Source of the DNA: Amphiscolops sp. MND2022 | Lineage: Eukaryota | Assembly: GCA_964187785.1 (NCBI GenBank) | Contig: OZ076419.1 | Span: 45,012,001 to 45,076,000 of the forward strand | DNA: 64,000 bases | Direction of reading: 5' to 3' | Shown: in pieces, positions 9,101-46,499 of the stretch | Position numbering within the stretch: the stretch's first letter is position 1 | How the letters are laid out: each line of letters begins with the position of its first letter | Notes under the pieces: model-generated | Told to the model about the DNA's origin: nothing | Databases searched by the model: none | The model's input: only the letters and a program-made list of their open reading frames with translations | Translations under genes and position numbers: made by a program

Positions 9101-11745
9101 CTGCGTTATCTGAATTTCTTTAATTTTTCTCTAGCTCGAAATTTTTTTTCGTTCTGCGTTATCAGAATTTGCTTAATCTTTTTCTAACTCGAAAATCTTT
9201 TTCATACTGCGTTATTAGAATTTCCTTAAATTTTTCATGATCGAAAATATTTTTCATACAGCGTTATCAGAATTCTTAAACTTCTAATTAAAATTTTTTC
9301 CAGGTCTCTGCCACAGTCGCTTAGAAATAAGATGAAAGAGAGCCGCCTAGCCCGTAGAACGGACGTCGACCGTGCCGAAGATTACATTCAGCACCAGAGG
9401 CAAGCGCTGGAAGCATGTACCGGAGATTCTGGCGAGGACCGCAGCCGGCCTTGGCTGAAAAACACGCTCGCGACGTTCTACGGGGAAACAAACCACTTCC
9501 AGGAACCCCACAGATTACTCCAGGTGACGATGATTCAGAAACGTCAGCGACTGGCCCCTCAAACTATCTTGACGTACCTGGCGTGCCTGAAGAAATTCGT
9601 CGACTATCTTGTGATCCGCGATAACATCGACGCTGCCCGGATCCAGGCTGCCATGAACGAAGTGAAAGCAATCTACACAACCAGCACTGCTTGCAAAAGC
9701 CGGAGGAAGGCTGACGAACGCTTCAAGCTGGTGCCCAGCCACAACATCGTGGTAGCACGCCACGAGCAAGTTCTGAAACATTGCAGGAAAACGTAGAGGA
9801 AGAGAGTCCTTATTTGGAGGATAAGGCCCTCAATTACTTCCTTCTGCAGGCGCGGCTGAACTGCAGAAATTAGCCAATTATGAACTTGACTTGGGAAATG
9901 ATCGAGGGAATCCAGCGAAACGGGTCGGTTTTGACGAGCAGACACAAAACCGGCCAATATTACGACGTCGCCCTCCGTGTGGAGCAGCCTGACCAGATCC
10001 CCCTCCTGTACCATTTGAAAAAGACGTACCGACGAGAGTTCCAAGCTGTTCCGGTGCTGAGCTTTTATACTCAGAAGGGTACAGCGGATAGAAGTATGGC
10101 TCGCGAGATCTCCGAAGTCTTCGCAGCGAAGTTCGGCGATAGAGCCACTGACATCCGCTTCAACTCCAACTCAATGAGAAAGTAAAGGAGGGGAGAATGC
10201 AGCAGCTGAGGCAGAACGAGGAAATTGCTGCTGATTTCATGACCGAGCATCTGCACCAGACTGGACATACACAGCAAACAGCCGAGAAATACTACATGTC
10301 AGCCAATATTGCCAACAGAAATCGATTGCTGGATCACCTCGTCAACGATCTTCGCGCGGTCCCCAAAGAAGGCGAGGTGTCAGAACCAGTAAATGTAATT
10401 GGCCCGGTTGATTCAACTGCCTCAACAATCGAAAATGCGACTCCATTAGCAGTGAGAGAAGCGAGGCAGAAAAAAATTGAGCGCGCGGAACGGGGTTAGT
10501 AGAACAGTGTCTCAGAATGTTTTCAAGTTTTTTCTAAGTTATCTCTAGTGGTGTGTGTCAGCCAATTACATTCGAGAGTGTCCGGATTTCTTCAGAGAGT
10601 TTTTCATGATTTCTCTAGCGTTTTGAGTCCAAAGTTTTTTTCTGTTTTAATAGGGAAGACACGGCGGCAGCTGGCTCAACGACCAACAACTGAAGAGGAA
10701 CCGGGCCGGGAAAGGAGAGGGCAAGACGTTAGGATTACAGGGCTGGGGGCATCACAGACTTTTCAGTCAGGGTTGGGGGGTGTTCCACAGGTAGGAGAGG
10801 GTCAAGTGGCAGAGGAAACTCCGTGGTTGCGAGACGACAGTCTGATGATGACAAGCAACGTCATGGAGTCCACCACGAGGGATGATGAAATTGAGAACCA
10901 AGGGTCACAGCCATCTGGGAAGAGGAAACGACCAATGGCAGGAGGTGTAGTTTTCAATGACGGTCAACGAGTCCGTGACGTTCGACTAGAAGAACCGCCC
11001 CCCTCACGCAGTCCCCAAAGAGAACGATTCATCAAAAGTTTGCTGACGTTCAAGGGCATCGAAACTCGACCGGCATGGACCGAGGCGCTGTCCATTTTTT
11101 CGACATCAAAACGAATGTGACGAAGAAAGTTGTTGAACGTATCTTGTGACGCCGGCCATTTTTTAGAGGCAAAGGAAGTCGCGGCAATTTACAACAGTCA
11201 AATTTTCGTTCAACAGCCAAATGAAATGATTTGAATTTGATCTGGAGGACCAAACAGTTACTTTCATCAACGTTTTGCAGTTACAACATTTAGACTTATA
11301 GATAATCAGATCTTTTTTTATCGAGTGGTTCCTCTAGATATTCATTTTTTTCTGTGGCCATTTCTGTCCCAAAGACACTCAACTGCAGTCGAACCACCTG
11401 AAACACCGGAGAATAGTGGAGACTGCTGCCTGGCGGAATGAACTCTGAGCCGTAGGTTGTTCTAGGATATCGAAAATTCTGAACTTTTCGCACGCTTCTT
11501 TTCAACCATTTACATTTGAGTATCTCAGAAATTCAATTTTTCGAATTTTCTGCACGTTTCCTCTTCAGCCAATTAAAACTGAGTGTCTGCGAATTTCATC
11601 AAAATATTCTGTTTCAAAATAATATGCACGTTTCCTCTGAGCCAATCAAAACCGAGTGTCTCCGAATTTCATCAAAGTATTTTTTTCTAAAATATATGCA
11701 AGTTTCCTCTAAGCCAATGAAAACTGAGTGTCACCGAATTTCAGA
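6167..11745 (+). mobile_element. A1 Crypton-like unit (about 6 kb when complete): upstream region, four-exon gene, 3' repeat region
   Basis: The same upstream-gene-downstream order recurs head-to-tail, restarting at a C-run (6167, 16253, 29332, 33816). Encodes a tyrosine recombinase. No RT, TIR or LTR seen. Confidence 0.65.
7350..11234 (+). pseudogene. A1 gene copy 2 (exon 1 partial to 7594; exon 2 7836-8788; exon 3 9304-10494; exon 4 10654-11234)
   Basis: Same SET, ZnF and YR motifs, with canonical GT-AG junctions in consistent phases. Frameshifts and stops, including two lesions shared with the other A1 copies. Confidence 0.85.
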
Positions 11746-12135
11746 ACTCAGAACGTCTTTTAATGAATTTATAACAAAATAGATGAAACTTGTTTGAACC
11801 AATTTTTTTCGAGTCTCGAAATTTCTTTAGGTATTTTGAATTTTTACAGGCTTCTTTTCAACCAATTACAAAGGAGTTTCTCAAAATTTTATCAAAATAT
11901 TTTTTGAATTTCGAATATAATTATAACAAAATTGTTGAAACATGTGTGAACCAATTATATTCGAGTGTCTCAAAACTTCTTCAGGTAATATTTTTGAATT
12001 CTTTACATGCTTCTTTTCAACCAATTACAAACGAGTTTCTCAGAAAATTATCAAAGTATATTCTGAATTTCGAATAAATTTATAACAAAATATTGAAAAT
12101 GTGTGAACCAATTATATTCGAGTGTCTCAAAGTTT
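11560..12135. repeat. Degenerate CCAATTA-N4-GAGTGTCTC minisatellite (A1 3' region joined to intron 1; also in intron 3 and in all A1 copies)
   Basis: For example AGCCAATCAAAACCGAGTGTCTCCGAATTT (11641), AACCAATTATATTCGAGTGTCTCAAAAC (478, 11950) and AGCCAATTACATTCGAGAGTGTCC (10560). Confidence 0.8.
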
Positions 12136-12262
12136 TTAGGTTGTTTTTTTTCTGATTTTCTACAGACTTCAATAGAATACAATAAGTTGTAAACTAGAAA
12201 CTATTTGTTACTATTGTAATTCATTCATGTATTTTCAAATTTGTATACCTCAACTCGTTTAG

Positions 12263-15200
12263 GCATGGTTGGATTCCTTGAGAAAGTGGAAGGCGAGCTC
12301 AGGCCTGAGCAGTGTTTCTCAGTCTTCGGCGGAAAAAGCGGAGACCGAATCATGCTCGGGCCCGCGAGTTTCAACAACCACTCGTGCGAGCCGAACGTGG
12401 AGTTTGTCTGTTCGGGTTCCAAGGCGAAGACCATCGTCAAAGTGAAAGCTCTTTATGCCCGGTCCGAAATTGCTCGTCAAGTAATCTGATGATTACTTCG
12501 TCGAGGGCAATGTCGACTGTTTGTCTCGGAAATGCAACAAGACGAGGATGACGGCGCAATTTCCCCAGAAGCCTTGGGTTACGAGCTGACTGCTGACTTG
12601 GTCGAAGAGTTAGCTGCTGCTTCAATTCCTGCTTTCCAAGAAGAAGAAGCGGATGCATTGAGTTCAATGCCGGAAAAGCAGCTGATGAATCAACAACCAG
12701 TCTTCCACGAGCTCAGGAGTGCGCCTGTTCTCCCGATGCGGACACAGAGTCATTGGAATCAGCAGTGCCGGAAGAAGTAATGTCAGTGCCGCAAGAAATG
12801 TCAGTGCAGCGATTGATGGAAATTTCGGCAGGGTTCGAAGCTGACGCCTTACCAAGTCTGCCAGTTTTCACCCACAATGCAAATGAACAACCAGGAAAAT
12901 CTGATGTGCCTCAAAATGCTCCTGCTGATACCGCAGTTCCGAAAGAAGCGAGCAAAATACTCACAGGAGAACGAGTGCAACAGTTGCCATGTGTCTGTTG
13001 TGCGAATTGATCGGCACTTGAAGCATGTGCACGGTGATCTCCTCACCGAAACCGAGCAGACTCTGATTAAGGACTTCCGCGATTCAAAGACAGTCAGGTT
13101 CTGCTCCAAGTGTTTGCGCCGTGTTGCTTCGGTGCCAACTCACAAATCGAGATGCCCTGGTCACCTGGAGAAGCTACCGGAGTTTCGAAGTGTGAAGTGA
13201 GTAGTCATCGGATTAACTTTTTAGCTCGAAAATATTTTTCATACTGCGTTATTAGAATTTCCTTAAATTTTTCATGATCGAAAAGATTTTTCATACTGCG
13301 TTATCAGAATTTCGTTAAATTTTTCCAGTTCGAAATTATTGATCATACTGCGTTATCAGAATTTCCTTACTTTTTCCTAGCTCGAAAGTTTTTTTTTCAT
13401 TCTGCGTTCTCAGAATTTCCTTAATCTTTCTCAAACCCGAAAATATTTTTCATACTGCGTTATCAGAATTTCGGTTAAGTTTTTCCAGTTCGAAAGTATT
13501 GATCATACTGCGTTATCTGAATTTCCTTAATTTTTCTCTAGCTCGAATTTTTTTTTTCGTTCTGCGTTATCAGAATTTCCTCCATCTTTTTCTAATTCGA
13601 AAATCTTTTTCATACTGCGTTATTAGAATTTCCTTAAATTTTTCATGATCGAAAATATTTTTCATACTGCGTTATCAGAATTCTTAAACTTCTAATTAAA
13701 ATTTTTTCCAGGTCTCTGCCACAGTCGCTAAGAAATAAGATGAAAGAGAGCCGCCTGGCCCGTAGAACGGACGTCGACCGTGCCGAAGAATACATTCAGC
13801 ACCAGAGGCAAGCGCTGGAAGCATGTACCGGAGATTCTGGCGAGGACCGCAGCCGGCCTTGGCTGAAAAACACGCTCGCGACGTTCTACGGGGAAACAAA
13901 CCACTTCCAGGAACCCCACAGACTACTCCAGGTGACGATGCTTCAGAAACGTCAGCGACTGGCCCCTCAAACTATCTTGACGTACCTGGCGTGCCTGAAG
14001 AAATTCGTCGACTATCTTGTGATCCGCGATAACATCGACGCTGCCCGGATCCAGGATGCCATGAACGAAGTGAAAGCAATCTACACAATCAGCACTGCTT
14101 GCAATAGCCGGAGGAAGGCTGACGAACGCTTCAAGCTGGTGCCCAGCCACAACATCGTGGTAGCACGCCACGAGCTAGTTCTGAAACATTGCAGGAAAAC
14201 GTTGAGGAAGAGAGTCCTTATTTGGAGGATAAGGCCCTCAATTACTTCCTTCTGCAGGCGCGGCTGAACTGCAGAAATCAGCCAATTATGAACTTGACTT
14301 GGGAAATGCTCGAGGGAATCCAGCGAAACGGGTCGGTTTTGACGAGCAGACACAAAACCGGCCAATATTACGACGTCGCCCTCCGTGTGGAGCAGCCTGA
14401 CCAGATCCCCCTCCTGTACCATTTGAAAAAGACGTACCGACGAGAGTTCCAAGCTGTTCCGGTGCTGAGCTTTTATACTCAGAAGGGTACAGCGGATAGA
14501 AGTATGGCTCGCGAGATCTCCGAAGTCTTCGCAGCGAAGTTCGGCGATAGAGCCACTGACATCCGCTTCAACTCCAACTCAATGAGAAAGTAAAGGAGGG
14601 GAGAATGCAGCAGCTGAGGCAGAACGAGGAAATTGCTGCTGATTTCATGACCGAGCATCTGCACCAGACTGGACATACACAGCAAACAGCCGAGAAATAC
14701 TACATGTCAGCCAATATTGCCAACAGAAATCGATTGCTGGATCACCTCGTCAACGATCTTCGCGCGGTCCCCAAAGAAGGCGAGGTGTCAGAACCAGTAA
14801 ATGTAATTGTCCCGGTTGATTCAACTGCCTCAACAATCGAAAATGCGACTCCATTAGCAGTGAGAGAAGCGAGGCAGAAAGAAATTGAGCGCGCGGAACG
14901 GGGTTAGTAGAACAGTGTCTCAGAATGTTTTCAAGTTTTTTTTTCTAAGTTATCTCTAGTGGTGTGTGTCAGCCAATTACATTCGAGAGTTTCCGGATTT
15001 CTTCAAAGAGTTTTTCATGGTTTTCTCTAGCGTTTCGTGTCAACCAATTACAATTGAGAGTCTCCGAATTTCTTTAGAAGTATTTTTCATGATTTCTCAA
15101 GCGTTTTGACTCCAAAGTTTTTTTTCTGTTTTAATAGGGAAGACACGGCGGCAGCTGGCTCAACGACCAACAACTGAAGAGGAACCGGGTCGGGAAAGGA

Positions 15201-15719
15201 GAGGGCAAGACGTTAGGATTACAGGGCTGGGGGGCATCACAGACTTTTCAGTCAGGGTTGGGGGGTGTTCCACAGGTAGGAGAGGGTCAAGTGGCAGAGG
15301 AAACTCCGTGGTTGCGAGACGACAGTTTGATGATGACAAGCAACGTCATGGAGTCCACCACGAGGGATGATGAAATTGAGGACCAAGGGTCACAGCCATC
15401 TGGGAAGCGGAAACGACCAATGGCAGGAGGTGTAGTTTTCAATGACGGTCAACGAGTCCGTGACGTTCGACTAGAAGAACCGCCCCCCTCACGCAGTCCC
15501 CAAAGAGAACGATTCATCAAGAGTTTGCTGGCGTTCAAGGGCGTCGAAACTCGACCGGCATGGACAGAGGCGCTGTCCATTTTTTCGACATCAAAACGAA
15601 TGTGACGAAGAAAGTTGTTGAACGTATGTTGTGACGCCGGCCATTTTTTAGAGGCAAAGGAAGTCGCGACAATTTACAACAGTCAAATCTTCGTTCAACA
15701 ACCAAATGAAATGATTTGA
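12263..15719 (+). pseudogene. A1 gene copy 3 (exon 2 12263-13196; exon 3 13712-14902; exon 4 15138-15719); begins inside intron 1 at a junction near 11746
   Basis: High identity to copy 2. Deletions in the SET exon. YR motifs NCRNQP, HKTG, NSMRK, GHTQQTAEKYY. Confidence 0.85.
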
Positions 15720-17445
15720 ATTTGATCTGGAGGACCAAACAGTTACTTTCATCCACGTTTTGCAGTTACAACATTTAGTCTTATAGATAATCAGATTTTT
15801 TTTATCGAGTGGTTCCTCTAGATACTATTCATTTTTTTCTGTGGCCATTTCTGTACCGAAGACACTCAACTGCAGTCGAACCACCTGAAACACCGGAGAA
15901 TAGTGGAGACTGCTGCCTGGCGGAATGAATTCTGAGCCTTAGGTTGTTCTAGGATATCGAAAATTCTGAACTTTTCGCACGCTTCTTTTCAACCACTTAC
16001 ATTTGAGTATCTCAGAAATTCAATTTTTCGAATTTTCTGCACGTTTCCTCTTCAGCCAATTAAAACTGAGTGTCTGCGAATTTCATCAAAATATTCTGTT
16101 TCAAAATAATATGCACGTTTCCTCTGAGCCAATCAAAACCGAGTGTCTCCGAATTTCATCAAAGAATTTTTTTCTAAAATATATGCAAGTTTCCTCTAAG
16201 CCAATGAAAACTGAGTGTCACCGAATTTCACCAAAGTATATTTTCAATCAATCCCCCCCAAACATATCATTTCCTTTATTCATCCCACAAAAGGTAGTTA
16301 TATCACTTTTTAACTCATGATCATGCAACTTCTACACCTTTTGCTAATTGGAAAAAATATATTCAAGCGCAATTCGAATTGGAAGCGCCTCAAGTTGCTA
16401 AAACTTAAGGTAATTGAATGCGGTTGAGTGGAAATGGGATGGTGTCATAGGTTTAGTGTTAATTAAAGGCACCGTTCAGGGGTCAAGTGAAATTATCACT
16501 GAGTTAAAAGTAACGACGAATTAATTGTAGTATATTATAGCTACCTGCTACTGAAACTTATTGCTGATACTGGGGGTAAAAACTAAAATTTTTGCCCTTA
16601 CTGTCGGGCGGATTAGTAGAATTGATGGTTTTTTTTCAACCCTTTCCTCCACTCGCTGTTCAAATATTTGATCCATCGAATAAAATGAATAATTTGTTCC
16701 CGGAACTTCCTCTTGGCAATTGAATGTTTAAGGCCTTAGACATTTTTTATTCCGAATTTCTTCAGTGGAAATTATTGAAAGCTCGTCTTTTGTTATCCTT
16801 GCCCCAACAAGCATGTTTGGAATACCACTAATTTACCGTATTGCTTACATTAATCAAAATAGCATATCGTTTCATTTAATCTTTCGACAGAAAGTAATTT
16901 CATCACTATTTTACTCCTGATCATGCAACTTCTACACCTATTGCTAATTGGAAAGTAATTATATCTAAACGCATTTCGAATTAAAATTGACTCAAGCTGC
17001 TGAAATTTGAGGTAATTGAATGCGGTTGAGAGGAAATGGGATGGTGTTGTAGGTTAAGTGTTAGTTAATGGCACCCTTTTAATCGGGAACTGTCAATGAA
17101 ATTTGCGTCCTTTCGTAGGTGCCAAACCTCAAGCTCAGGATCCTTCAATAGCAAAATCAATAAACCATTTCGCCATCTCCAAGCTAGTACGCTCAACTCA
17201 ACTCAACTGAATTACTTTTCAAACTTTTCGATCTACTTCAAAACAGCAACCTTCATTCAACCATACTTCTTCAATTTCAATTTAATTTAAAACTTTTTGC
17301 GATCTCCAAGATAGTGTGCTCAACACAACTACTTTTCAAACTTTCCCATCGGTTTCAAAACAGCAACGTTCTCTTCGATTTCAATTTCAATTCAATTCAA
17401 TTTCAATTTCGATTCAGCAACCTACTTTCTATTTCAATTTAAAAA

Positions 17446-23042: not shown

Positions 23043-23978
23043 GACAACACACAAATTCTATATCGCAAGCGATTTTAAAGAAGCGATTAGGCAGAAGGGT
23101 GCTCTGAAGCTATACAATGAAATCTTTCAGAGCTACGTGCTGAGTTTGCAAAAAGTGGAGATCCGGGCGGAAGACGTGAACTACCCACCCGATCTTTCGG
23201 ACAGCTTCGCAGTTTACGTGCCCAAAGAAGCAGAGGGACCGCTGCCTGAAGGCTTCATCATTGATGGTTAATATTAGAGTTTCTTGCAAAAAGTACTCAG
23301 AATGTCTTTCAATGAATTTATAACAAAATAGTTGAAACTTGTTTGAAACATTTTTTTCGAGTCTCGAAATTTCTTTAGGTATTTTGAATTTTTACAGGCT
23401 TCTTTTCAACCAATTACAAAGGAGTTTCTCAAAACTTTATCAAAATATTTTTTGAATTTCGAATATAATTATAACAAAATTGTTGAAACATGTGTGAACC
23501 AATTATATTCGAGTGTCTCAAAACTTCTTCAGGTAATATTTTTGAATTCTTTACATGCTTCTTTTCAACCAATTACAAACGAGTTTCTCAGAAAATTATC
23601 AAAGTATATTCTGAGTTTCGAATAAATTTATAACAAAATATTGAAAATGTGTGAACCAATTATATTCAAGTGTCTCAAAGTTTTTAGGTTGTTTTTTTCT
23701 GATTTTCTACAGACTTCAATAGAATACAATAAGTCGTAAACTAGAAACTATTTGTTACTATTGTAATTCATTCATGTATTTTCAAATTTGTATACCTCAA
23801 CTCGTTTAGGCATGGTTGGATTCCTTGAGAAAGTGGAAGGTGAGCTCAGGCCTGAGCAGTGTTTCTCAGTCTTCGGCGGAAAAAGCGGAGACCGAATCAT
23901 GCTCGGGCCCGCGAGTTTCAACAACCACTCGTGCGAGCCGAGCGTGGAATTTCGTCGGTTCGGGTTCCAAGGCGAAGG
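23043..23978 (+). pseudogene. A1 fragment: exon 1 3' part (to 23266), intron 1 (23267-23809), start of SET exon 2
   Basis: THKFYIASDF...FIIDG|GTTAAT, then TTTAG|GC ATG GTT. Breaks at about 23978 back into upstream-region sequence. Confidence 0.8.
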
Positions 23979-24487
23979 AACCTTCCCATCGATTTCAAAA
24001 CAGCAACGTTCTCTTCGATTTCAATTTCAATTCAATTCAATTTCAACTTCGATTCAGCAACCTACTTTCTATCTCCAAGATAGTGTGCTCAAACTTTCCC
24101 ATCGATTTCAAAACAGCAACGTTCTCTTCGATTTCAATTTCAATTCAATTCAATTTCAATTTCGATTCAGCAACCTACTTTCTATTTCAACTTAAAAAAT
24201 GGCCTCTTCAAATTAGTCAAAATGCAACTTGTCGGGAGCAAGGGACGCTGAAGTTACAAAACAACTAATCGACAATGACAAAACACACAAATTCTATATC
24301 GCCAGCGATTAGGCAGAAGGGTGCTCTGAAGCTATAATTTCAATTTAAAACGTTTTGCGATCTCCAAAATAGTGTGCTCAAACTTTCCCATCGATTTCAA
24401 AACAGCAACGTTCTCTTCGATTTCAATTTCAATTCAATTCAATTTCAATTTCGATTCAGCAACCTACTTTCAATTTCAATTTAAATA

Positions 24488-27400
24488 ATGGCCTCTACAA
24501 ACTCGTCAAAATGCAACTTGTTGGGAGCAAGGGACGCTGAAGTTACAAAGCAACTAATCGACAATGACACAACACACAAATTCTATATCGCAAGCGATTT
24601 TAAAGAAGCGATTAGGCAGAAGGGTGCTCTGAAGCTATACAATGAAATCTTTCAGAGCTACGTGCTGAGTTTGCAAAAAGTGGAGATCCGGGCGGAAGAC
24701 GTGAACTACCCACCCGATCTTTCGGACAGCTTCGCAGTTTACGTGCCCAAAGAAGCAGAGGGACCGCTGCCTAAAGGCTTCATCATTGATGGGTAATATT
24801 AGTTTTTTTGCAAAAAGTACTCAGAATGTCTTTCAATGAATTTATAACAAAATAGATGAAACTTTTTTGAACCAATTTTTTTCGAGTCTCGAAATTTCTT
24901 TAGGTATTTTTGAATTTTTACAGGCTTCTTTTCAACCAATTACAAACGAGTTGCTCAAACTTTTATCAAAATATTTTTTGAATTTCGAATATAATTATAA
25001 TAAAATTGTTGAAATATGTGTGAACCAATTATATTCGAGTGTCTCAAAACTTCTTCAGGTAATATTTTTGTATTCTTTACAGGCTTCTTTTCAACCAATT
25101 ACAAACGAGTTTCTCAGAAAATTATCAAAGTATATTCTGAATTTCGAATAAATTTATAACAAAATAGTGAAAATGTGTGAACCAAATATATTCGAGTGTC
25201 TCCGGTTTTTAGGTTGTTTTTTTTCTGATTTTCTACAGACTTCAATAGAATACAATAAGTCGTAAACTAGAAACTATTTGTTACTATTGTAATTCATTCA
25301 TGTATTTTCAAATTTGTATACCTCAACTCGTTTAGGCATGGTTGGTTTCCTTGAGAAAGTGGAAGGTGAGCTCATGCCTGAGCAGTGTTTCTCAGTCTTC
25401 GGCGGAAAAAGCGGAGACCGAATCATGCTCGGGCCCGCGAGTTTCAACAACTACTCGTGCGAGCCGAACGTGGAGTTTGTCTGTTCGGGTGCCAAGGCGA
25501 AGACCATCGTCAAAAGGAAAGCTCTTCAAAACATTATGCCCGGTGCGCAATTGCTCGTCAAGTACTCTGATGATTACTTCCTCGAGGGCAATGTCGACTG
25601 TTTGTCTCGGAAATGCAACAGGACGAGGATGACGGTGCAATTTCCCCAGAAGCCTTGGGTTACGAGCTGACTGCTGACTTGGTCGAAGAGTTAGCTGCTG
25701 CTTCAATTCCTGCTTTCCAAGAAGAAGAAGCGGATGCATTGAGTTCAATGCCGGAAAAGCAGCTGATGAATCAACAACCAGTCTTCCACGAGCTCAGGAG
25801 TGCGCCTGTTCTCCCGATGCGGACACAGAGTCATTGGAATCAGCAGTGCCGGAAGAAGTAATGTCAGTGCCGCAAGAAATGTCAGTGCAGCGATTGATGG
25901 AAATTTCGGCAGGGTTCGAAGCTGAGGCCTTACCAAGTCTGCCAGTTTTCACCCACAATGCAAATGATGAACAACCAGGAAAATCTGATGTGCCTCAAAA
26001 TGCTCCTGCTGATACCGCAGTTCCGAAAGAAGCGAGCAAAATACTCACAGGAGAACGAGTGCAACAGTTGCCATGTGTCTGTTGTGCGAATTGATCGGCA
26101 CTTGAAGCATGTGCACGGTGATCTCCTCACCGAAACCGAGCAGACTCTGATTAAGGACTACTACCGCTTCCGCGATTCAAAGACAGTCAGGTTCTGCTCC
26201 AAGTGTATGCGCCGTGTTGCTTCGGTGCCAACTCACAAATCGAGATGCCCTGGAGAAGCTACCGGAGTTTCGAAGTGTGAAGTGAGTAGTCATCGGATTA
26301 ACTTTCTAGCTCGAAAATATTTTTCATACTGCGGTATTAGAATTTCCTTAAATTTTTCATGATCGAAAATATTTTTTATACTGCGTTATCAGAATTTCGT
26401 TAAATTTTTTCCAGTTCGAAATTATTGATCATACTGCGTTATCAGAATTTCCTTACTTTTTCCTAGCTCGAAAGTTTTTTTTTCATTCTGCGTTCTCAGA
26501 ATTTCCTTAATTTTTCTCAAACCCGAAAAAAATTTTCATACTGCGTTATCAGAATTTCGTTAAAGTTTTTCCAGTTCGAAAGTATTGATCATACTGCGTT
26601 ATCTGAATTTCCTTGATTTTTCTCTAGCTCGAAATTTTTTTTCGTTCTGCGTTATCAGAATTTCCTTCATCTTTTTCTAACTCGAAAATCTTTTTCATAC
26701 TGCGTTATTAGAATTTCCTTAAATTTTTCATGATCGAAAATATTTTTCATACTGCGTTATCAGAATTCTTAAACCTCTAATTAAAATTTTTCCAGGTCTC
26801 TGCCACAGTCGCTTAGAAATAAGATGAAAGAGAGCCGCCTGGCCCGTAGAACGGACGTCGACCGTGCCGAAGAATACATTCAGCACCAGAGGCAAGCGCT
26901 GGAAGCATGTACCGGAGATTCTGGCGAGGACCGCAGCCGGCCTTGGCTGAAAAACACGCTCGCGACGTTCTACGGGGAAACAAACCACTTCCAGGAACCC
27001 CACAGATTACTCCAGGTGACGATGATTCAGAAACGTCAGCGACTGGCCCCTCAAACTATCTTGACGTACCTGGCGTGCCTGAAGAAATTCGTCGACTATC
27101 TTGTGATCCGCGATAACATCGACGCTGCCCGGATCCAGGCTGCCATGAACCAAGTGAAAGCAATCTACACAACCAGCACTGCTTGCAAAAGCCGGAGGAA
27201 GGCTGACGAACGCTTCAAGCTGGTGCCCAGCCACAACATCGTGGTAGTACGCCACGAGCAAGTTCTGAAACATTGCAGGAAAAAGTTGAGGAAGAGAGTC
27301 CTTATTTGGAGGATAAGGCCCTCAATTACTTCTTTCTGCAGGCGCGGCTGAACTGCAGAAATCAGCCAATTATGAACTTGACTTGGGAAATGCTCGAGGG

Positions 27401-28800
27401 AATCCAGCGAAACGGGTCGGTTTTGACGAGCAGACACAAAACCGGCCAATATTACGACGTCGCCCTCCGTGTGGAGCAGCCTGACCAGATTCCCCACCTG
27501 TACCATTTGAAAAAGACGTACCGACGAGAGTTCCAGGCTGTTCCGGTGCTGATCTTTTATACTCAGAAGGGTACAGGGGATAGAAGTAAGGCTCGCGAGA
27601 TCTCCGAAGTCTTCGCAGCGAAGTTCGGCGATAGAGCCACTGACATCCGCTTCAACTCCAACTCAATGAGAAAGTAAAGGAGGGGAGAATGCAGCAGCTG
27701 AGGCAGAACGAGGAAATTGCTGCTGATTTCATGACCGAGCATCTGCACCAGACTGGACATACACAGCAAACAGCCGAGAAATACTACATGTCAGCCAATA
27801 TTGCCAACAGAAATCGATTGCTGGATCACCTCGTCAACGATCTTCGCGCGGTCCCCAAAGAAGGCGAGGTGTCAGAACCAGTAAATGTAATTGTCCCGGT
27901 TGATTCAACTGCCTCAACAATCGAAAATGCGACTCCATTAGCAGTGAGAGAAGCGAGGCAGAAAGAAATTGAGCGCGCGGAACGGGGTTAGTAGAACAGT
28001 GTCTCAGAATGTTTTCAAGTTTTTTTTCGAATTTATCTCTAGTGGTGTGTGTCAGCCAATTACATTCGAGAGTCTCCGGATTTCTTCAAAGAGTTTTTCA
28101 TGGTTTTCTCTAGCGTTTCGTGTCAACCAATTACAATTGAGAGTCTCCGAATTTCTTTAGAAGTATTTTTCATGATTTCTCTAGCGTTTTGAGTCCAAAG
28201 TTTTCTTCTGTTTTAATAGGGAAGACACGGCGGCAGCTGGCTCAACGACCAACAACTGAAGAGGAACCGGGCCGGGAAAGGAGAGGGCAAGACGTTAGGA
28301 TTACAGGGCTGGGGGCATCACAGACTTTTCAGTCAGGGTTGGGGTGTGTTCCACAGGTAGGAGAGGGTCAAGTGGCAGAGGAAACTCCGTGGTTGCGAGA
28401 CGACAGTCTGATGACAAGCAACGTCATGGAGTTCACCACGAGGGATGATGAAATTGAGGACCAAGGGTCACAGCCATCTGGGAAGCGGAAACGACCAATG
28501 GCAGGAGGTGTAGTTTTCAATGACGGTCAACGAGTCCGTGACGTTCGACTAGAAGAACCGCCCCCCTCACGCAGTCCCCAAAGAGAACGATTCATCAAGA
28601 GTTTGCTGACGTTCAAGGGCGTCGAAACTCAACCGGCATGGACAGAGGCGCTGTCCATTTTTTTCGACATCAAAACGAATGTGACGAAGAAAGTTGTTGA
28701 ACGTATGTTGTGTGACGCCGGCCATTTTTTAGAGGCAGAGGAAGTCGCGACAATTTACAGCAGTCAAATCTTCGTTCAACAACCAAATGAAATGATTTGA
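24488..28800 (+). pseudogene. A1 gene copy with all four exons (24488-24791, 25336-26281, 26796-27986, 28220-28800): Suv4-20-like SET / ZnF / tyrosine recombinase / C-terminal domain fusion
   Basis: Open exon 1 MASTNSSK...THKF...KLYNEIFQSYV...FIIDG resembles the Suv4-20 N-terminal helical region. Intron phases 1, 2, 1 join the frames in the consensus. This copy has a mutated intron-1 donor, deletions in exon 2 and two 1-nt deletions in exon 3. Confidence 0.85.
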
Positions 28801-31800: not shown

Positions 31801-34800
31801 ACATGATGAAGCCCTACATGATTGTATACGGCTGAACTGCAGAAATCAGCCAATTATGAACTTGACTTGGGAAATGCTCGAGGGAATCCAGCGAAACGGG
31901 TCGGTTTTGACGAGCAGACACAAAACCGGCCAATATTACGACGTCGCCCTCCGTGTGGAGCAGCCTGACCAGATCCCCCACCTGTACCATTTGAAAAAGA
32001 CGTACCGACGAGAGTTCCAGGCTGTTCCGGTGCTGATCTTTTATACTCAGAAGGGTACAGGGGATAGAAGTATGGCTCGCGAGATCTCCGAAGTCTTCGC
32101 AGCGAAGTTCGGCGATAGAGCCACTGACATCCGCTTCAACTCCAACTCAATGAGAAAGTAAAGGAGGGGAGAATGCAGCAGCTGAGGCAGAACGAGGAAA
32201 TTGCTGCTGATTTCATGACCGAGCATCTGCACCAGACTGGACATACACAGCAAACAGCCGAGAAATACTACATGTCAGCCAATATTGCCAACAGAAATCG
32301 ATTGCTGGATCACCTCGTCAACGATCTTCGCGCGGTCCCCAAAGAAGGCGAGGTGTCAGAACCAGTAAATGTAATTGTTCCTGTTGATTCAACTGCCTCA
32401 ACAATCGAAAATGCGACTCCATTAGCAGTGAGAGAAGCGAGGCAGAAAGAAATTGAGCGCGCGGAACGGGGTTAGTAGAACAGTGTCTCAGAATGTTTTC
32501 AAGTTTTTTTTCGAATTTATCTCTAGTGGTGTGTGTCAGCCAATTACATTCGAGAGTCTCCGGATTTCTTCAAAGAGTTTTTCATGGTTTTCTCTAGCGT
32601 TTCGTGTCAACCAATTACAATTGAGAGTCTCCGAATTTCTTTAGAAGTATTTTTCATGATTTCTCTAGCGTTTTGAGTCCAAAGTTTTCTTCTGTTTTAA
32701 TAGGGAAGACACGGCGGCAGCTGGCTCAACGACCAACAACTGAAGAGGAACCGGGCCGGGAAAGGAGAGGGCAAGACGTTAGGATTACAGGGCTGGGGGC
32801 ATCACAGACTTTTCAGTCAGGGTTGGGGTGTGTTCCACAGGTAGGAGAGGGTCAAGTGGCAGAGGAAACTCCGTGGTTGCGAGACGACAGTCTGATGACA
32901 AGCAACGTCATGGAGTTCACCACGAGGGATGATGAAATTGAGGACCAAGGGTCACAGCCATCTGGGAAGCGGAAACGACCAATGGCAGGAGGTGTAGTTT
33001 TCAATGACGGTCAACGAGTCCGTGACGTTCGACTAGAAGAACCGCCCCCCTCACGCAGTCCCCAAAGAGAACGATTCATCAAGAGTTTGCTGACGTTCAA
33101 GGGCGTCGAAACTCGACCGGCATGGACAGAGGCGCTGTCCATTTTTTTCGACATCAAAACGAATGTGACGAAGAAAGTTGTTGAACGTATGTTGTGTGAC
33201 GCCGGCCATTTTTTAGAGGCAGAGGAAGTCGCGACAATTTACAGCAGTCAAATCTTCGTTCAACAACCAAATGAAATGATTTGAATTTGATCTGGAGGAC
33301 CAAACAGTTACTTTCAACAACGTTTTGCAGTTACAACAGTTAGTCTTATAGATAATCAGATCTTTTTTTATCGAGTGGTTCTAGATTTTATTCATTTTTT
33401 TCTGTGGCCATTTCTGTCCCAAAGACACTCAACTGCAGTCGAACCACCTGAAACACCGGAGAATAGTGGAGACTGCTGCCTGGCGGAATGAACTCTGAGC
33501 CTTAGGTTGTTCTAGGATATCGAAAATTCTGAACTTTTCGCACGCTTCTTTTCAACCATTTACATTTGAGTATCTCAGAAATTCAATTTTTCGAATTTTC
33601 TGCACGTTTCCTCTTCAGCCAATTAAAACTGAGTGTCTGCGAATTTCATCAAAATATTCTGTTTCAAAATAATATGCACGTTTCCTCTGAGCCAATCAAA
33701 ACCGAGTGTCTCCGAATTTCATCAAAGTATTTTTTTCTAAAATATATGCAAGTTTCCTCTAAGCCAAATAAAACTGCGTGTCACCGAATTTCACCAAAGT
33801 ATATTTTCAATCAATCCCCCCCAAACATATCATTTCCTTTATTCATCCCACAAAAGGTAGTTATATCACTTTTTAACTCATGATTATGCAACTTCTACAC
33901 CTTTTGCTAATTGGAAAAAATATATTCAAGCGCAATTCGAATTGGAAGCGCCTCAAGTTGCTAAAACTTAAGGTAATTGAATGCGGTTGAGTGGAAATGG
34001 GATGGTGTCATAGGTTTAGTGTTAATTAAAGGCACCGTTTAGGGGTCAAGTGAAATTTTCACTGAAATAATAGTAACGACCAATTAATTGTAGTATTTTA
34101 TAGCTACCTGCTACTGAAACTTATTGCTGATACTGGGGGTAAAAACTAAAATTTTTGCCCTTACTGTCGGGCGGATTAGTAGAATTGATGGTTTTTTTTC
34201 AACCCTTTCCTCCACTCGCTGTTCAAATATTTGATCCATCGAATAAAATGAATAATTTGTTCCCGGAACTTCCTCTTGGCAATTGAATGTTTAAGGCCTT
34301 AGACATTTTTATTCCGAATTTCTTCAGTGGAAATTATTGAGAGCTCGTCTTTTGTTATCCTTGCCCCAACAAGCATGTTTGGAATACCACTAATTTACCG
34401 TATTGCTTACATTAATCAAAATAGCATATCGTTTCATTTAATCTTTCGACAGAAAGTAATTTCATCACTATTTTACTCCTGATCATGCAACTTCTACACC
34501 TATTGCTAATTGGAAAGTAATTATATCTAAACGCATTTCGAATTAAAATTGACTCAAGCTGCTGAAATTTGAGGTAATTGAATGCGGTTGAGAGGAAATG
34601 GGATGGTGTTGTAGGTTAAGTGTTAGTTAATGGCACCTTTTTAATCGGGAACTGTCAATGAAATTTGCGTCCTTTCGTAGGTGCCAAACCTCAAGCTCAG
34701 GATCCTTCAATAGCAAAATTAATAAACCATTTCGCCATCTCCAAGCTAGTACGCTCAACTCAACTCAACTGAATTACTTTTCAAACTTTTCAATCTACTT

Positions 34801-39365: not shown

Positions 39366-40656
39366 TACTTCAAGCTATTCGACTTCACAGAACCAACTTT
39401 GCTTCTGCGGTCAACTACGTTGAATCAGAATTTTGCTGAAATTCCCAATCACTTTGATCTTAGTTTCTCATTTCAAACTTCAATTGATTAAAATGCCCCG
39501 TCAACTGAGAGGAACAGCACTTGAAATTTCCCGGATAGCCACAAAGAACACTCCGAAGCCATCCAAACAAGGATGTTGAATAAAACACAAACGATTGAGA
39601 AAAAACAATTTTCTTCTTTCGGAAGAAACTTTGAAATGAATGACTTTTATGCTTTGCATTCTTTTGCTGAAACTTGCAGAACGAAACGTTTGTCAAAAAA
39701 TAAAAATTCGTTGTGAATAACATTGATTTCCACGGTAGTTTATCCGTAAGGGAAAAACTATGCAGAACAATGAACAATATTTATCAATGACCTGTTCAAA
39801 TTTTTGGGTGAAAAAAACAATATTTACCATTTTTGTACAAGAAACAGTGATGCCCCAAAGTCAATCTAAGAGGTTGAGAAAGGAAAAAGTTAGAGCCACT
39901 CCCAATCTTTTCTTCGACATTTGTGGAAGTGTCAGAAACTGCAGACTGTCGAAGACAATCTATGAGGTTGAGAAAGGAAAAAGTTAGAGCCACTCCCAAT
40001 CTTAACTTCGACTTTTGTGGAAGAGACAGAAAAAGTTAGAGAGCCAATAATTACCTACCGAAGACAAGCTAAGATGACCAAACTTCGCCCAGGTTTTGGC
40101 GTTAGAAAAACCCCCAGTAGTTCACTGCATTAGGTATGCAAGCACTGAAGCTGTCGCTTTCATGGACTACCCGTTTGACGTGGAAACGATCCCTAATCAC
40201 AACGAGCAGTGTATGAGGGCAACAGTGAGCGTGGTTCAAAATGGATTCCACAAAGCGGAGGAAACCAATAAGGTAAATATTCGTAAAAACAAAGACTTAA
40301 ACTTCTAAACGTTTTGTATGTTTTCATCGACTTTAAAATGGCATCTAAACGTTCACTTCGAAAATTAAAAATGACGTCTGATTGTGCACTTTGCACCAAC
40401 AATTTGCTTTGGGAAAGAGTGGGATTTTTTTCAGTAAGCAATAAACGTCTGCAATTTTAAAACGGTATTCTTTCATTTTTTGCCAAATACTCCTTCTCAT
40501 GAGTGCTTAGTTCGAGCGAACCAAACCCACAATTAGCAAGCGTCAAAAAACTTGATGGAATCAAAAATTGTCGTTTTATGCCTAACTTTGAAATGCTTTA
40601 GGACTATTTGATAACGCGGGAATGCTACGAAGCCTGGCAGATTCTGGGTTTTTTGG

Positions 40657-43600
40657 ATGCGCGGGGAAGAAGTAACAGTATCCTACTCAGAAGACTACTT
40701 TAGGCCTGGCAATGTTGACTGCAAATGCCCTTCGTGTGCTTCCAAGAAGACAATTAAGGTTGCCGCTCAACTACGCCCCCCTGCTGCAGCAACACAGGAG
40801 GAGGATCAATTGCCCCTTCCTAATGAACTGATGTTGCCGCTCAAGATTCACCGCGAAGTACAGCGGCCATCTCCGCAAGCCCAATGTCCAATGGGTTTGT
40901 TGTTATTTTGCCAAGCCCCCCTGCAACTCCTGCCAAAAATAAGAAACGCGAGTGCTTCACACGATTTGCCACTTTAGTCACCAACAAGCAGGTCAACAAG
41001 TGTGACGGTTCCACTGTCCTAAAGGTGCCCAACCCGGAGAGCAGAAGTTCGTTGCCAGCGGAAATCAAAGCGGCAGCGAAGTTGAGCTTTTTGCCAAGCT
41101 TGGATGTTGCTGAGCGCTTCGTCCAATTTCAGACAGACATTTCCAAGTGCAGTGGTGAAAATCGCAAGTGGAGCCTTGACAGGGGGACATTGTGAAACTG
41201 ATGGCCCAGATGTTAAATATGATGCGCTCTTTGAGATGCCCCGAGCATCTTGTCAATGGGTGTCTTGAAATGAAGACTGCAAAGAACCTGAAGCTGCAGA
41301 CTATGCTAAACTATCCGTCGATTTTCAAGCTTTTCGTTGATTATTGCTACCTCAACAGTTGGAATACCGTCGTATGAAAACTACACTAGTTTCTCAGAGA
41401 GGGCTGTGGTTGCGATAGAAGATATTCAGAAGGACACCGAATTAGGAGGTATGAAGGGATTCGGTGCGAAAGTGAAGGAAGACCAGCTGCCGCCATCCAG
41501 CCAGTTCTACTTCAAAAGGCTGGGAATCAACGACATGGTTACGTTGGGCCCAGCCAGTTTCATAAATCACAACTGCGAACCAAACTGCCAGTACATTTGT
41601 CGTGGTGAGAGAAATTCAACAATTTTTATAAAGACTAAAAGAGCTTTAGTGCGCGGGGAAGAAGTAACAGTATCCTACTCAGATGACTACTTTGGGCCTG
41701 GCAATGTTGACTCCAAATGCCCTTCGTGTGCTTCCAAGAAGACAACGCCAATTGAGGTTGCCGCTAACTAAGCCTCTCTGCTTCAGCAACACAGCAGGAG
41801 GATCAATTGCTCCTTCCGGAGGAACTTGATGTTGCCGCTCAACAAAGCCCCCCTGCTGCAGCAACACAGGAGGAGGATCAATTGCCCCTTCCTAAGGAAC
41901 TTGAGGTTGCCGCTCAAGATTCACCGCGAAGTTCAGCGGCCATCTCCGCAAGCCCAATGTCCAATGGGTTTGTTGTTATTTTGCCACCAAGCCCTCCTGC
42001 AACTCCTGCCAAACATAAGAAACGCGAGAAGAAAGTCAAAACAGATGACCGCGTTGAGTGCTTTGTTCGCCATTAAGTGGTAAATTGAATCGATAGGCAT
42101 CTGGTTCAGACGCATTCAGACATTTTTGACGGAAAACAGCGACGTTTCTGCTTGGCTTTTTATAGATGCAGGAACGCCAAGGCCCAGAGGAAAGTTAATG
42201 ATTGCGTAGAGTGCTTCACACGATTTGCCACTTTAGTCACCAATAAGCAGGTCAACAAGTGTGACGGTTCCACTGTCCTAAAGGTGCCCAACCCGGAGAG
42301 CAGAAGTTCGTTGCCAGCGGAAATCAAAGCGGCAGCGAAGTTGAGCTTTTTGCCAAGCTTGGATGTTGCTGAGCGCTTCGTCCAATTTCAGACAGACATT
42401 TTCAAGTGCAGTGGTGAAAATCGCAAGTGGAGCCTTGACAGGGGGGCATTGTGAAACTGATGGCCCAGATGTTCAATATGACGCGCTCTTTGAGATGCCC
42501 CTAGCATCTTGTCAATGGGTGTCTTGAGATGAAGACTGCAAAGAACCTGAAGCTGCAGACTATGCTAAACTATCCGTCGATTTTCAAGCTTTTCGTTGAT
42601 TATTGCTACCTCAACAGTTGGAATACCATCGTATGAAAACTACACTAGTTTCTCAGAGAGGGCTGTGGTTGCGATCGAAGATATTCAGAAGGACACCGAA
42701 TTAGGAGGTATGAAGGGATTCGGTGCGAAAGTGAAGGAAGACCAGCTGCCGCCATCCAGCCAGTTCTACTTCAAAAGGCTGGGAATCAACGACATGGTTA
42801 CGTTGGACCCAGCCAGTTTCAAAAATCACAACTGCGAACCAAACTGCCAGTACATTTGTCGTGGTGAGAGAAATTCAACAATTTTCATAAAGACTAAAAG
42901 AGCTTTAGTGCGCGGGGAAGAAGTAACAGTATCCTACTCAGATGACTACTTTGGGCCTGGCAATGTTGACTGCAAATGCCTTTCGTGTGCTTCCAAGAAG
43001 ACAACGCCAATTGATGTTGCCGCTAACTAAGCCTCTCTGCTGCAGCAACACAGCAGGAGGATCAATTGCTCCTTCCGGAGGAACTTGATGTTGCCGCTCA
43101 ACAAAGCCCCCCTGCTGCAGCAACACAGGAGGAGGATCAATTGCCCCTTCCTAAGGAACTTGAGGTTGCCGCTCAAGATTCACCGCGAAGTTCAGCGGCC
43201 ATCTCCGCAAGCCCAATGTCCAATGGGTTTGTTATTTTGCCACCAAGCCCTCCTGCAACTCCTGCCAAACATAAGAAACGCTAGAAGAAAGTCAAAACAG
43301 ATGACCGCGTTGAGTGCTTTGTTCGCCATTAAGTGGTAAATCGAATCGATAGGCATCTGGTTCAGACGCATTCAGACATTTTTGACGGAAAACAGCGACG
43401 TTTCTGCTTGGCTTTATATAGATGCAGGAACGCCAAGGCCCAGAGGAAAGTTAATGATTGCGTAGAGTGCTTCACACGATTTGCCACTTTAGTCACCAAC
43501 AAGCAGGTCAACAAGTGTGACGGTTCCATTGTCCTAAAGGTGCCCAACCCGGAGAGCAGAAGTTCGTTGCCAGCGGAAATCAAAGCGGCAGCGAAGTTGA

Positions 43601-46258: not shown

Positions 46259-46499
46259 ATGTGGTCATACTCTTGAGAGTTGGAACCAGCCACACCCCGT
46301 AGGAAGTAATTAAATTTAGGTTGTGCTACCCCAACTGAAATGAAAAAAAAATGCCCTAGTTGTTTTCTCAACCTAATAGAATTCCAAAATACTACTCTGG
46401 ATGAAATGATTTTTTACCTATAGCCCAGCCGTCTCGACCTCAGTTCGGACGAAGAAAATTGCCATCGACAGGACCGACAAACCGTTGCCCACCACGAAA

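What the first reader, a model, noticed from the sequence alone, without database searches (positions are those of the whole stretch)
24488..28800. Suv4-20-like histone methyltransferase fused to a tyrosine recombinase in one spliced gene on a Crypton-like unit
Seen in sequence: the short ORFs join into a single ~1,000-aa frame through three GT-AG introns: FIIDG|LVG (phase 1), RSVK|SLPQ (AA|GTGAGT to CCAG|G, phase 2) and AERG|KTRR (phase 1). The joined protein is SET, linker, Zn module, YR, C-terminal domain. Established knowledge: THK...KLxxE.F.Y, LVG, FSV, LGPAxFxNHxC and YxDxxFG..NxxC follow the Suv4-20/KMT5B-C H4K20 methyltransferase catalytic module. The R (NCRNQP), K (HKTG), xxxR (NSMRK), GH and Y (eight residues after GH) pattern is the tyrosine-recombinase active site used by Cryptons. 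Inference: this is a DNA transposon whose recombinase carries its own H4K20 writer and could mark chromatin at its integration or excision sites (H4K20me2 recruits 53BP1; H4K20me3 marks heterochromatin). I do not know of a described element class with this architecture, but I could not search databases.
Basis: partly seen in the sequence, partly recalled or inferred. Interest (0 to 1): 0.95.

Follow-up and report, generated by a model that had tools for sequence, protein, structure and literature searches.

The report
Dead jumping gene with histone-tagging recombinase
This stretch is a decayed copy of an animal jumping gene whose DNA-cutting enzyme (a tyrosine recombinase) is fused to a histone H4K20-type methyltransferase domain; intact relatives show the fusion is real, and I found no paper that describes it.

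Summary
This copy (24488-28800) is dead. It has six frameshifting indels, one in-frame stop and a mutated intron-1 donor, and it sits in a block of segmental or tandem duplicates that share some of these lesions.

The fusion itself is real. Related loci carry SET+zinc module+YR in single uninterrupted ORFs of 653, 728 and 1157 aa. The SET matches only KMT5B/C among solved structures. A model of a relative's YR matches Cre, XerH and lambda Int (Z 10-12), and R, K, R, H and Y are conserved. His-II is Asn, and no Pfam YR or DUF3504 profile hits.

Related elements of 6.6-11.4 kb carry no reverse transcriptase. They are flanked on both sides by (TAA)n or (TAG)n, two of them with short inverted end motifs, and one locus shows head-to-tail junctions. 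That fits Crypton-like circle integration into microsatellites.

A second YR clade carries a different SET type, which suggests two captures.

I found no paper describing the architecture, but unannotated SET+YR proteins exist in UniProt. Earlier notes of this scan report the same architecture on other pieces of this genome. H4K20 activity and any chromatin role are untested.

The parts
24416..24458 (.). Imperfect (TTCAAT)n-like repeat about 30 bp upstream of the ATG. It recurs at the 5' side of every unit (17374, 24014, 24127, 30452, 34937).
24488..24791 (+). Exon 1: N-terminal part of the SET region, homologous to the N-terminus of P0046.
24792..25335 (+). Intron 1 (phase 1). The donor is mutated in this copy (GGTTAA to GGGTAA). 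The intron is filled with 159-bp tandem repeats.
25336..26281 (+). Exon 2: SET C-terminal half and post-SET (to about 25620), linker, and C2H2-like zinc module (about 26040-26281). It is broken by indels at 25645 (-13), 25811 (-1), 26027 (-2) and 26248 (-8). NHxC reads NYSC at 25449-25460.
26282..26795 (+). Intron 2 (phase 2, AA|GTGAGT...CAG|G), mostly a 53-bp tandem repeat.
   Evidence: junction K|SLPQ read through in P0046
26796..27986 (+). Exon 3: tyrosine recombinase. It holds the SAM-like/core-binding domain, then the catalytic domain with Arg-I 27357-27359, Lys 27438-27440, Arg-II 27669-27671, His-III 27758-27760 and Tyr 27785-27787. It is broken by -1 at 27271, a TAA stop at 27675-27677 and a +1 just after.
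27987..28219 (+). Intron 3 (phase 1, G|GTTAGT...TAG|GG), with a 71-bp tandem repeat.
28220..28800 (+). Exon 4: low-complexity linker and a conserved helical C-terminal domain (RERFIKSLLTFKG... to the stop), shared with all full-length relatives.
393..2217 (+). Copy Z of the same family (about 91% identical). Linker plus zinc module is open as a 160-aa ORF. It joins a second family (zinc module-YR-C-terminal domain) that runs from about 2217 to 5140.
7352..11743 (+). Copy A (about 95% identical). SET to linker is open in one 179-aa ORF.
11743..16923 (+). Copy B (97% identical), 5'-truncated in intron 1. It shares the 27271 and 27675 lesions with A and C.
23044..23977 (+). Fragment P: part of exon 1, intron 1 and part of the SET exon.
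31829..33284 (+). Copy D, 5'-truncated at the equivalent of 27345. It is 99.7% identical to copy C over 4.5 kb.
40400..46300 (+). Third family ('B'): a 1257-bp tandem array of SET plus zinc module with a YR remnant at its end. The SET is KMT5B-like, with FSV replaced by FYF.

Best explanation
The locus is a decayed copy of a multi-copy, Crypton-like (YR-encoding, no reverse transcriptase) DNA element of an animal genome. Its single four-exon gene once encoded about 1,000 aa: a Suv4-20/KMT5B-C-like SET domain, an acidic linker, a C2H2-like zinc module, a two-domain tyrosine recombinase and a small helical C-terminal domain.

Shown:
- the domain order;
- that SET and YR lie in one gene in relatives;
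- the Suv4-20-like identity of the SET;
- the YR fold and the conserved R-K-R-H-Y positions;
- that this copy is dead and that the copies in this window were multiplied by segmental or tandem duplication.

Inferred from related elements: the recombinase excises the element as a circle. Its junction is a short inverted-repeat pair around a trinucleotide repeat. The circle integrates by site-specific recombination into genomic (TAA)n or (TAG)n microsatellites. This gives elements flanked by the repeat on both sides and head-to-tail arrays.

Inferred, untested (about 35%): the SET domain is an active H4K20 methyltransferase or nucleosome tether. It would act in cis with the recombinase, either steering integration to particular chromatin or laying H4K20me2/3 over the element.
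For: Domains: Pfam SET on copy A and family B. The SET hits only KMT5B/KMT5C in the PDB.

YR: the AlphaFold model of relative P0044 has core pLDDT above 90. All top Foldseek hits are tyrosine recombinases. VIA-align gives Z 10-12 over both YR domains against XerH, Cre, XerA, lambda Int and Tn1549 Int, and the Swiss-Prot top hits are XerC/XerD. LN.R.GP, HKTG, N.IRK and GH..TA...Y are conserved across 27 proteins.

One gene: uninterrupted ORFs P0046 (L001), P0090 (L002) and P0094 (L004) join the domains. A SET ORF lies directly upstream of the YR ORF in L006, L007 and L008. Within the family every junction is bridged by an open frame in some copy.

Mobile element: at least 5 copies lie in the window. 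Depth is roughly 20-30 times that of a single-copy gene. The most abundant read contigs carry the bases missing in this copy at 26027, 26248 and 27271. L001 and L002 hold 99%-identical 9.6-kb elements at different loci, each flanked by (TAA)n. L002 has right end-(TAA)8-left end junctions, and an 11/12 inverted 12-mer lies 5 nt inside each end. L004 is flanked by (TAG)n and has a 12/14 terminal inverted 14-mer. L008 is flanked by (ATA)n. No RT lies inside these elements.

Selection: dN/dS between L003 and the window copies is 0.2-0.4 for the YR, the zinc module and exon 1. The SET motifs are kept in families that are about 50% or less identical.
Against: - No RNA evidence for splicing or expression in this genome. 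The runs found behave as DNA, and no RNA-Seq run was listed.
- No Pfam YR or DUF3504 hit even at E<=1.
- His-II of the YR pentad is Asn, Thr or Pro.
- The ends of this particular family are unresolved. The window holds no microsatellite of 5 or more units, and the two outside loci of the family (L003, L010) are collinear with each other including flanks.
- dN/dS of the SET exon 2 between L003 and the window is about 1.2, on only 16 changes.
- The SET fold could not be modelled (pLDDT 40).
- Copies in the window share lesions, so here they spread by duplication, not transposition.
Confidence: 0.85

Rival explanations
1. The SET-YR gene is only the integrase gene of a larger element (a giant or virus-like YR element carrying further cargo). 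The roughly 6-kb unit seen here would then be a fragment of it.
For: Related elements are 9.6 kb (L001) and 11.4 kb (L008), with extra ORFs such as a weak FLYWCH-like ORF on the other strand. Earlier scan notes report JmjC and other chromatin genes next to SET-YR genes on other pieces of this genome. YRs with a C2H2 zinc domain that insert into simple repeats serve endogenous nimaviruses (PMC10871703).
Against: L004's element is 6.6 kb between its (TAG)n flanks, and the 1157-aa ORF is the only large ORF there. In the window the unit repeats head to tail about every 6 kb with no other conserved long ORF. No viral genes were seen.
Confidence: 0.15
2. The SET domain is catalytically dead in the element lineage and serves only as a nucleosome or H4-tail binding tether, or is a passenger.
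For: dN/dS is about 1.2 on the SET exon 2 between L003 and the window copies. The window copies have NYSC (copy C) and Cys to Ser in the post-SET zinc cluster. Family B replaces the FSV serine by Tyr. SET-less relatives exist as complete ORFs.
Against: NH.C, the Y..D.FG..N motif and the C.C..C post-SET cluster are intact in L003, L007, L008 and P0046, which are deeply diverged families. The defects listed are in dead copies. A second YR clade independently carries another SET.
Confidence: 0.25
3. It is a host gene family (a domesticated recombinase fused to a host KMT5 paralogue, as SETMAR is), not a mobile element.
For: Introns are present. Long-term purifying selection acts on the YR. UniProt entries are annotated as ordinary SET proteins.
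Against: There are tens of copies, most of them decayed. Near-identical copies lie at different loci with defined ends and microsatellite flanks and head-to-tail junctions. Several divergent families sit in one genome.
Confidence: 0.05
4. SET and YR are unrelated neighbours brought together by nested insertions, and the joint reading is a chance artefact.
For: This copy itself gives no continuous frame.
Against: Single ORFs span both domains in L001, L002 and L004. The same order is found in at least 6 families and 3 samples.
Confidence: 0.02

Closest known systems
Cryptons (YR-encoding DNA transposons; Goodwin 2003; Kojima & Jurka 2011, PMC3212892; active CryptonF in Chlamydomonas, PMC9977147)
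   Same: A DNA element with one YR gene, often with introns. It has no RT, no long TIRs or LTRs, and short direct repeats at both ends that match the target. The model is circle excision and site-specific integration. Accessory domains differ between Crypton groups.
   Different: There is no DUF3504 match, which all animal CryptonA/I YRs give (PMC3212892). His-II is Asn. A zinc module lies upstream of the YR. The flanking direct repeat is a whole trinucleotide microsatellite. The N-terminal SET fusion is not reported: per PMC3212892 the only recognisable domain of animal Cryptons is the YR.
Microsatellite/telomere-repeat-specific tyrosine recombinases of endogenous nimaviruses (Kawato et al. 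2023, PMC10871703)
   Same: Animal YRs with a C2H2 zinc-binding domain plus an N-terminal SAM-like domain. Some are multi-exon. The elements are flanked by simple repeats on both sides.
   Different: Those serve giant viral genomes and target (TAACC)n or 28S rDNA, and no SET domain is reported. Homology to the present family was not tested, because no sequences were at hand.
KMT5B/KMT5C (SUV420H1/H2), the H4K20me2/3 methyltransferases
   Same: The SET C-terminal half and post-SET region are about 45% identical to SUV420H1 over 85 residues in P0046. The FSV serine, LGPA.F.NH.C, Y..D.FG..N and C.C..C are present.
   Different: The domain is fused to a recombinase inside a mobile element. Similarity of the N-terminal helical domain is not shown. 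Activity and substrate are unknown. The window copies carry damaging substitutions.
SETMAR/Metnase (primate SET domain fused to an Hsmar1 mariner transposase)
   Same: One polypeptide combines a SET methyltransferase with a transposon recombination enzyme.
   Different: SETMAR is a single-copy host gene that captured a DDE transposase. Here the fusion is carried by the mobile element itself, with a YR and a different SET subfamily.
Chromodomain-bearing integrases of chromoviruses (Ty3/gypsy)
   Same: A mobile-element recombination enzyme carries a chromatin-mark module that may direct integration.
   Different: That module is a reader, not a writer. The integrase is of the DDE type, and the element is a retroelement.

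Membership tests
Tyrosine recombinase superfamily | Two-domain fold (core-binding domain plus catalytic domain) | tested here: met
   Tested on a model of relative P0044. VIA-align gives Z 10-12 over residues 170-506 against XerH, Cre, XerA, lambda Int and Tn1549 Int. All top hits are YR or topoisomerase IB. Window pieces align to this protein family.
Tyrosine recombinase superfamily | Catalytic Arg-I, Lys, Arg-II, His/Trp-III and the Tyr nucleophile 9 residues after His-III | tested here: met
   LN.R.GP, HKTG..IRK and GH..TA...Y are conserved in the 27-protein alignment and are present in the window copy at 27357, 27438, 27669, 27758 and 27785. This rests on alignment only; there is no residue-level structural superposition.
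Tyrosine recombinase superfamily | His-II of the H-x-x-R box | tested here: not met
   The position three residues before Arg-II is Asn (NS[IM]RK), or Thr or Pro in relatives.
Tyrosine recombinase superfamily | Match to a curated YR sequence profile (Pfam Phage_integrase and relatives) | tested here: not met
   Only a sub-threshold Phage_int_SAM_1 hit was found (E 0.009, 16.7 bits, below the 22.3 cut-off). Nothing hit for full-length relatives at E<=1.
Crypton (broad sense) | DNA element encoding a YR and no reverse transcriptase | tested here: met
   No RT lies inside the L001, L004 or L008 elements or the roughly 6-kb window unit. The RVT_1 genes in L001 lie outside the (TAA)n flank.
Crypton (broad sense) | [quoted passage not shown] | tested here: inconclusive
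   Met in relatives: (TAA)n or (TAG)n on both sides, and only 12-14-bp inverted motifs. The termini of the window's own family are not resolved.
CryptonA / CryptonI (animal Cryptons) | The YR matches DUF3504 (PF12012) | tested here: not met
   No DUF3504 hit for window pieces or full-length relatives. Swiss-Prot structural neighbours are XerC/XerD, not ZMYM, QRICH1 or KIAA1958.
DIRS / Ngaro YR retrotransposons | RT/RNase H (and MT) genes alongside the YR | tested here: not met
   None found in the unit or in the related elements.
KMT5B/C (Suv4-20) SET subfamily | SET C-terminal half and post-SET closest to KMT5B/C, with NH.C, the FSV serine and the C.C..C zinc cluster | tested here: met
   The PDB search hits only KMT5B/KMT5C for copy A (4.6e-7). 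For P0046 it gives 1.6e-16, against 1.5e-5 for the next SET type. Copy C itself has NYSC and C.S..C.
KMT5B/C (Suv4-20) SET subfamily | N-terminal helical domain and overall fold of KMT5B/C | tested here: inconclusive
   The structure prediction of P0046 residues 1-240 failed (pLDDT 40). The sequence match covers only the C-terminal about 85 residues.
KMT5B/C (Suv4-20) SET subfamily | Groups with KMT5B/C in a SET phylogeny; methylates H4K20 | not testable with these tools
   No outgroup SET sequences could be fetched (one search returned only the family itself). Activity needs a bench assay.
SETMAR-like host fusion gene | Single-copy, syntenic host gene | tested here: not met
   The family is multi-copy and decayed, with several families and element ends.

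The most novel reading that the evidence does not exclude
A widespread animal superfamily of microsatellite-targeting tyrosine-recombinase transposons has at least twice independently fused a histone-lysine methyltransferase domain to its recombinase (one Suv4-20-like, one of another SET type). The fused writer would methylate H4K20, or another histone lysine, at the recombination synapse. The element would then set the chromatin state of its own insertion site.
Probability: 0.3. Interest if true: 0.85.

Novelty: new variant of a known kind. Interest (0 to 1): 0.72.

Why it matters
Mobile elements are known to read chromatin (chromodomain integrases, tethering factors). A transposon whose own recombinase carries a histone-mark writer would be a new way for a selfish element to control, or hide in, host chromatin.

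The family is invisible to Pfam recombinase profiles. Its members are therefore likely annotated as ordinary 'SET domain' or hypothetical genes in animal proteomes, which would contaminate KMT5 gene counts.

The microsatellite-flanked ends give a concrete, testable recombination site. Naturally intact ORFs exist (P0094; the L008 gene), so a methyltransferase assay and a recombination assay are both feasible without rebuilding anything.

Tried and rejected
- **RNA evidence.** The four runs that hold the sequence cover introns and flanks evenly, so they behave as DNA, and none shows a joint at the three introns. A second search restricted to RNA-Seq listed none.
- **SET fold.** AlphaFold on P0046 residues 1-240 with a 10-row alignment gave pLDDT 40 and was unusable.
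- **SET relatives for a phylogeny.** The word-indexed protein search with the SET region returned only the family itself, so no tree with KMT5B/C was built.
- **Protein Atlas with P0090.** It gave only weak SET leads.
- **Pfam for the YR.** Nothing hit, even at E<=1.
- **Termini of the window's own family.** L003 and L010 turned out to be collinear with each other at about 94-95% including flanks, so they are the same locus or a duplicate and not independent insertions. No microsatellite lies in the window.
- **P0094-type SET as KMT5A/SET8-like.** I considered this and dropped it. A profile search puts KMT2A first (1.4e-8) and KMT5A only at 1.3e-4.
- **DIRS/Ngaro.** Rejected, because there is no RT.
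- **Consensus.** I built no frameshift-corrected consensus. Pieces were searched apart, and a piecewise alignment (A1) served as the profile.
Full report
**1. What is in the sequence**

The window is repeat-rich DNA from an animal. A TPGS1-like ORF at 61968-62738 matches metazoan clusters.

Between 24488 and 28800 on the + strand, short ORFs carry these features in order:
- an N-terminal region;
- a SET C-terminal half with FSV, LGPASFNN(Y)SC and YSDDYF.EGN;
- an acidic linker;
- a C-x2-C...H-x4-H / C-x2-C zinc module;
- a region with NCRNQP, HKTG, NSMRK and GH...Y;
- a conserved C-terminal tail.

The three proposed introns have canonical ends and the stated phases:
- intron 1, 24792-25335, phase 1;
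- intron 2, 26282-25795 is not correct as a range to quote loosely, so to be exact: 26282-26795, phase 2, AA|GTGAGT..CAG|G;
- intron 3, 27987-28219, phase 1.

In this copy the intron-1 donor has mutated from G|GTTAAT, which is kept at 7585, at 23257 and in L003, to GGGTAA.

**2. This copy is dead, and here it was multiplied by duplication**

The same family occurs at 393-2217, 7352-11743, 11743-16923, 23044-23977 and 31829-33284, at 91-99.7% identity. These copies sit inside larger blocks that repeat over 4.5-7.4 kb, and units follow each other head to tail about every 6 kb.

Aligning the copies with the outside locus L003 shows these lesions in copy C:
- exon 2: -13 at 25645, -1 at 25811, -2 at 26027, -8 at 26248;
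- exon 3: -1 at 27271, a TAA stop at 27675-27677 and a +1 just after it.

The exon-3 lesions are shared by copies A, B and C, so these copies descend from one defective copy. The intact reading is seen in P0001/L003 (..VLKLLQENV.. and ..NSMRKYREGRMQQL..).

The most abundant read contigs in public runs of this organism carry the missing bases at 26027, 26248 and 27271. Depth over the gene is roughly 20-30 times that of the single-copy ORF at 62-63 kb. This is a rough figure, because it is an assembler word depth.

Two further families lie in the window:
- a zinc module-YR-C-terminal family at about 2217-5140;
- a 1257-bp tandem array of SET plus zinc module with a YR remnant at 40400-46300.

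**3. The fusion is real**

Within the family, every junction is bridged by an open frame in some copy:
- SET to linker: 7885-8424 and 721-1002;
- linker to zinc module to ..RSVK: 1114-1596 and L003 8922-9677;
- the whole YR through the Tyr: L003 10001-11035.

A profile made from the pieces (A1) found only 66 proteins among 1.84 billion representatives. Among them and their neighbours are these ORFs and loci:
- P0046, 653 aa, one uninterrupted ORF holding SET, linker, zinc module and the YR N-domain.
- P0090, 728 aa, with the same content.
- P0094, 1157 aa, one ORF from another sample, a complete SET-repeats-zinc module-YR-C-terminal protein.
- L006, L007 and L008, where a SET-bearing ORF of 197-557 aa lies directly upstream of the YR ORF.

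**4. Domain identities**

SET. Pfam SET is above threshold for copy A and for family B. Against all PDB sequences, copy A hits only KMT5B and KMT5C (4.6e-7 to 3.4e-5). P0046 gives 1.6e-16 for SUV420H1, against 1.5e-5 for the next SET type. The alignment covers FSV, LGPA.FINH.C, Y..D.FG..N and the C.C..C post-SET cluster. Family B gives 2.6e-12. The N-terminal half could not be tested, because the model failed.

YR. No Pfam YR or DUF3504 profile hits. The AlphaFold model of P0044 is confident in the core, and the structural matches are these:
- all top Foldseek PDB hits are tyrosine recombinases;
- VIA-align gives Z 10-12 over both domains;
- Swiss-Prot neighbours are XerC/XerD.

Arg-I, Lys, Arg-II, His-III and Tyr (His+9) are conserved. 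His-II is Asn, Thr or Pro.

Selection. dN/dS between L003 and the window copies is 0.2-0.4 for the YR, the zinc module and exon 1. For the SET exon 2 it is about 1.2, on few changes.

**5. Mobile-element anatomy, seen in relatives**

L001 and L002 hold 99%-identical 9.6-kb elements at different loci. Their features are:
- each is flanked by (TAA)n on both sides;
- L002 shows right end-(TAA)8-left end junctions twice;
- an 11/12 inverted 12-mer lies 5 nt inside each end.

L004's 6.6-kb element is flanked by (TAG)n and ends in a 12/14 inverted 14-mer. L008's 11.4-kb element is flanked by (ATA)n.

Circularised, such ends form two inverted arms around a trinucleotide-repeat spacer, which is the layout of a YR core site. 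This fits the Goodwin model of Crypton integration, which was confirmed for active Cryptons in Chlamydomonas (PMC3212892, PMC9977147). It also resembles the simple-repeat targeting by zinc-domain YRs of endogenous nimaviruses (PMC10871703).

No RT lies inside these elements. For the window's own family the ends remain unresolved.

**6. Evolution**

In a tree of 24 family proteins, the lineages known to carry the Suv4-20-like SET lie on one side of a 96/99 branch. The P0094/P0096 clade carries a different SET, whose best PDB match is KMT2A at 1.4e-8. SET-less complete proteins form a third group. This suggests two separate SET captures. The tree is unrooted, and the SET status of many rows is unknown.

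**7. Novelty**

Full-text searches found no description of a YR element with a SET domain. Kojima & Jurka state that the only recognisable domain of animal Cryptons is the YR.

AFDB clusters nevertheless contain structurally matching UniProt entries named 'SET domain-containing protein' and 'SETD8-A'. A Protein Atlas lead points to 1162-aa SET-bearing clusters. The architecture therefore exists, unannotated, in other animals. Repbase and Dfam could not be searched.

Earlier notes of this scan, including one follow-up, report the same SET-YR architecture on other pieces of this genome.

**8. Verdict**

'Crypton' holds only in the broad sense, and the chromatin function is untested.

Noticed in passing
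window 40400-46300: A 1257-bp unit is repeated about four times in tandem. Each unit holds a KMT5B-like SET ORF plus the zinc module of a third family, and the active-site FSV reads FYF (Ser to Tyr). A YR remnant follows the last unit (45848-46258).
   Followed up: partly
window 17677-23044 and 35240-40414: A stretch of about 5.4 kb interrupts exon 1 of the next head-to-tail unit and is duplicated along with it. Other first-stage notes call it a RAG1/Transib-like remnant with BRCT. Pfam found nothing on its two longest ORFs (19718-20080, 21081-21488).
   Followed up: partly
window 59559-60755: Remnant of an LTR-retrotransposon pol gene (RT_RNaseH 1.3e-11; weak integrase zinc and core hits).
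   Followed up: partly
window 61968-62738: An intact 256-aa ORF with TPGS1_C (tubulin polyglutamylase complex subunit 1-like, 1.5e-32). It is single-copy by read depth and is probably a host gene.
   Followed up: partly
window 24831-25202, 26303-26767, 28049-28189, 29117-29323: All three introns and the 3' region are filled with 53-, 71-72- and 159-bp tandem repeats. Similar units (..CAACCAATTACAAACGAG..) recur across the window and are strongly expanded in L003 and L010.
   Followed up: no
window 28662 joined back to 24489 (reads of runs X3, X4): Contigs join position 28662, in the C-terminal domain exon, to the start codon at 24489 with AAAAAAAC in between. This is some rearranged or head-to-tail copy elsewhere in the genome.
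   Followed up: no
L001 4431-6368 (minus strand): Inside the 9.6-kb element, upstream of the SET-YR gene, three minus-strand ORFs may form a second gene. One has a weak FLYWCH zinc-finger match (E 0.0012).
   Followed up: partly
L003 557-14831 vs L010 1042-14512: Two contigs of one ENA assembly are collinear at about 94-95% over more than 13 kb, element and flanks included. They are either divergent haplotypes or a segmental duplicate.
   Followed up: partly
L005 (Logan contig of 2829 nt, run SRR30000402): A complete 706-aa SET-less relative (zinc module-YR-C-terminal domain) sits on a contig of transcript-like size. This hints that relatives are expressed in another organism.
   Followed up: no
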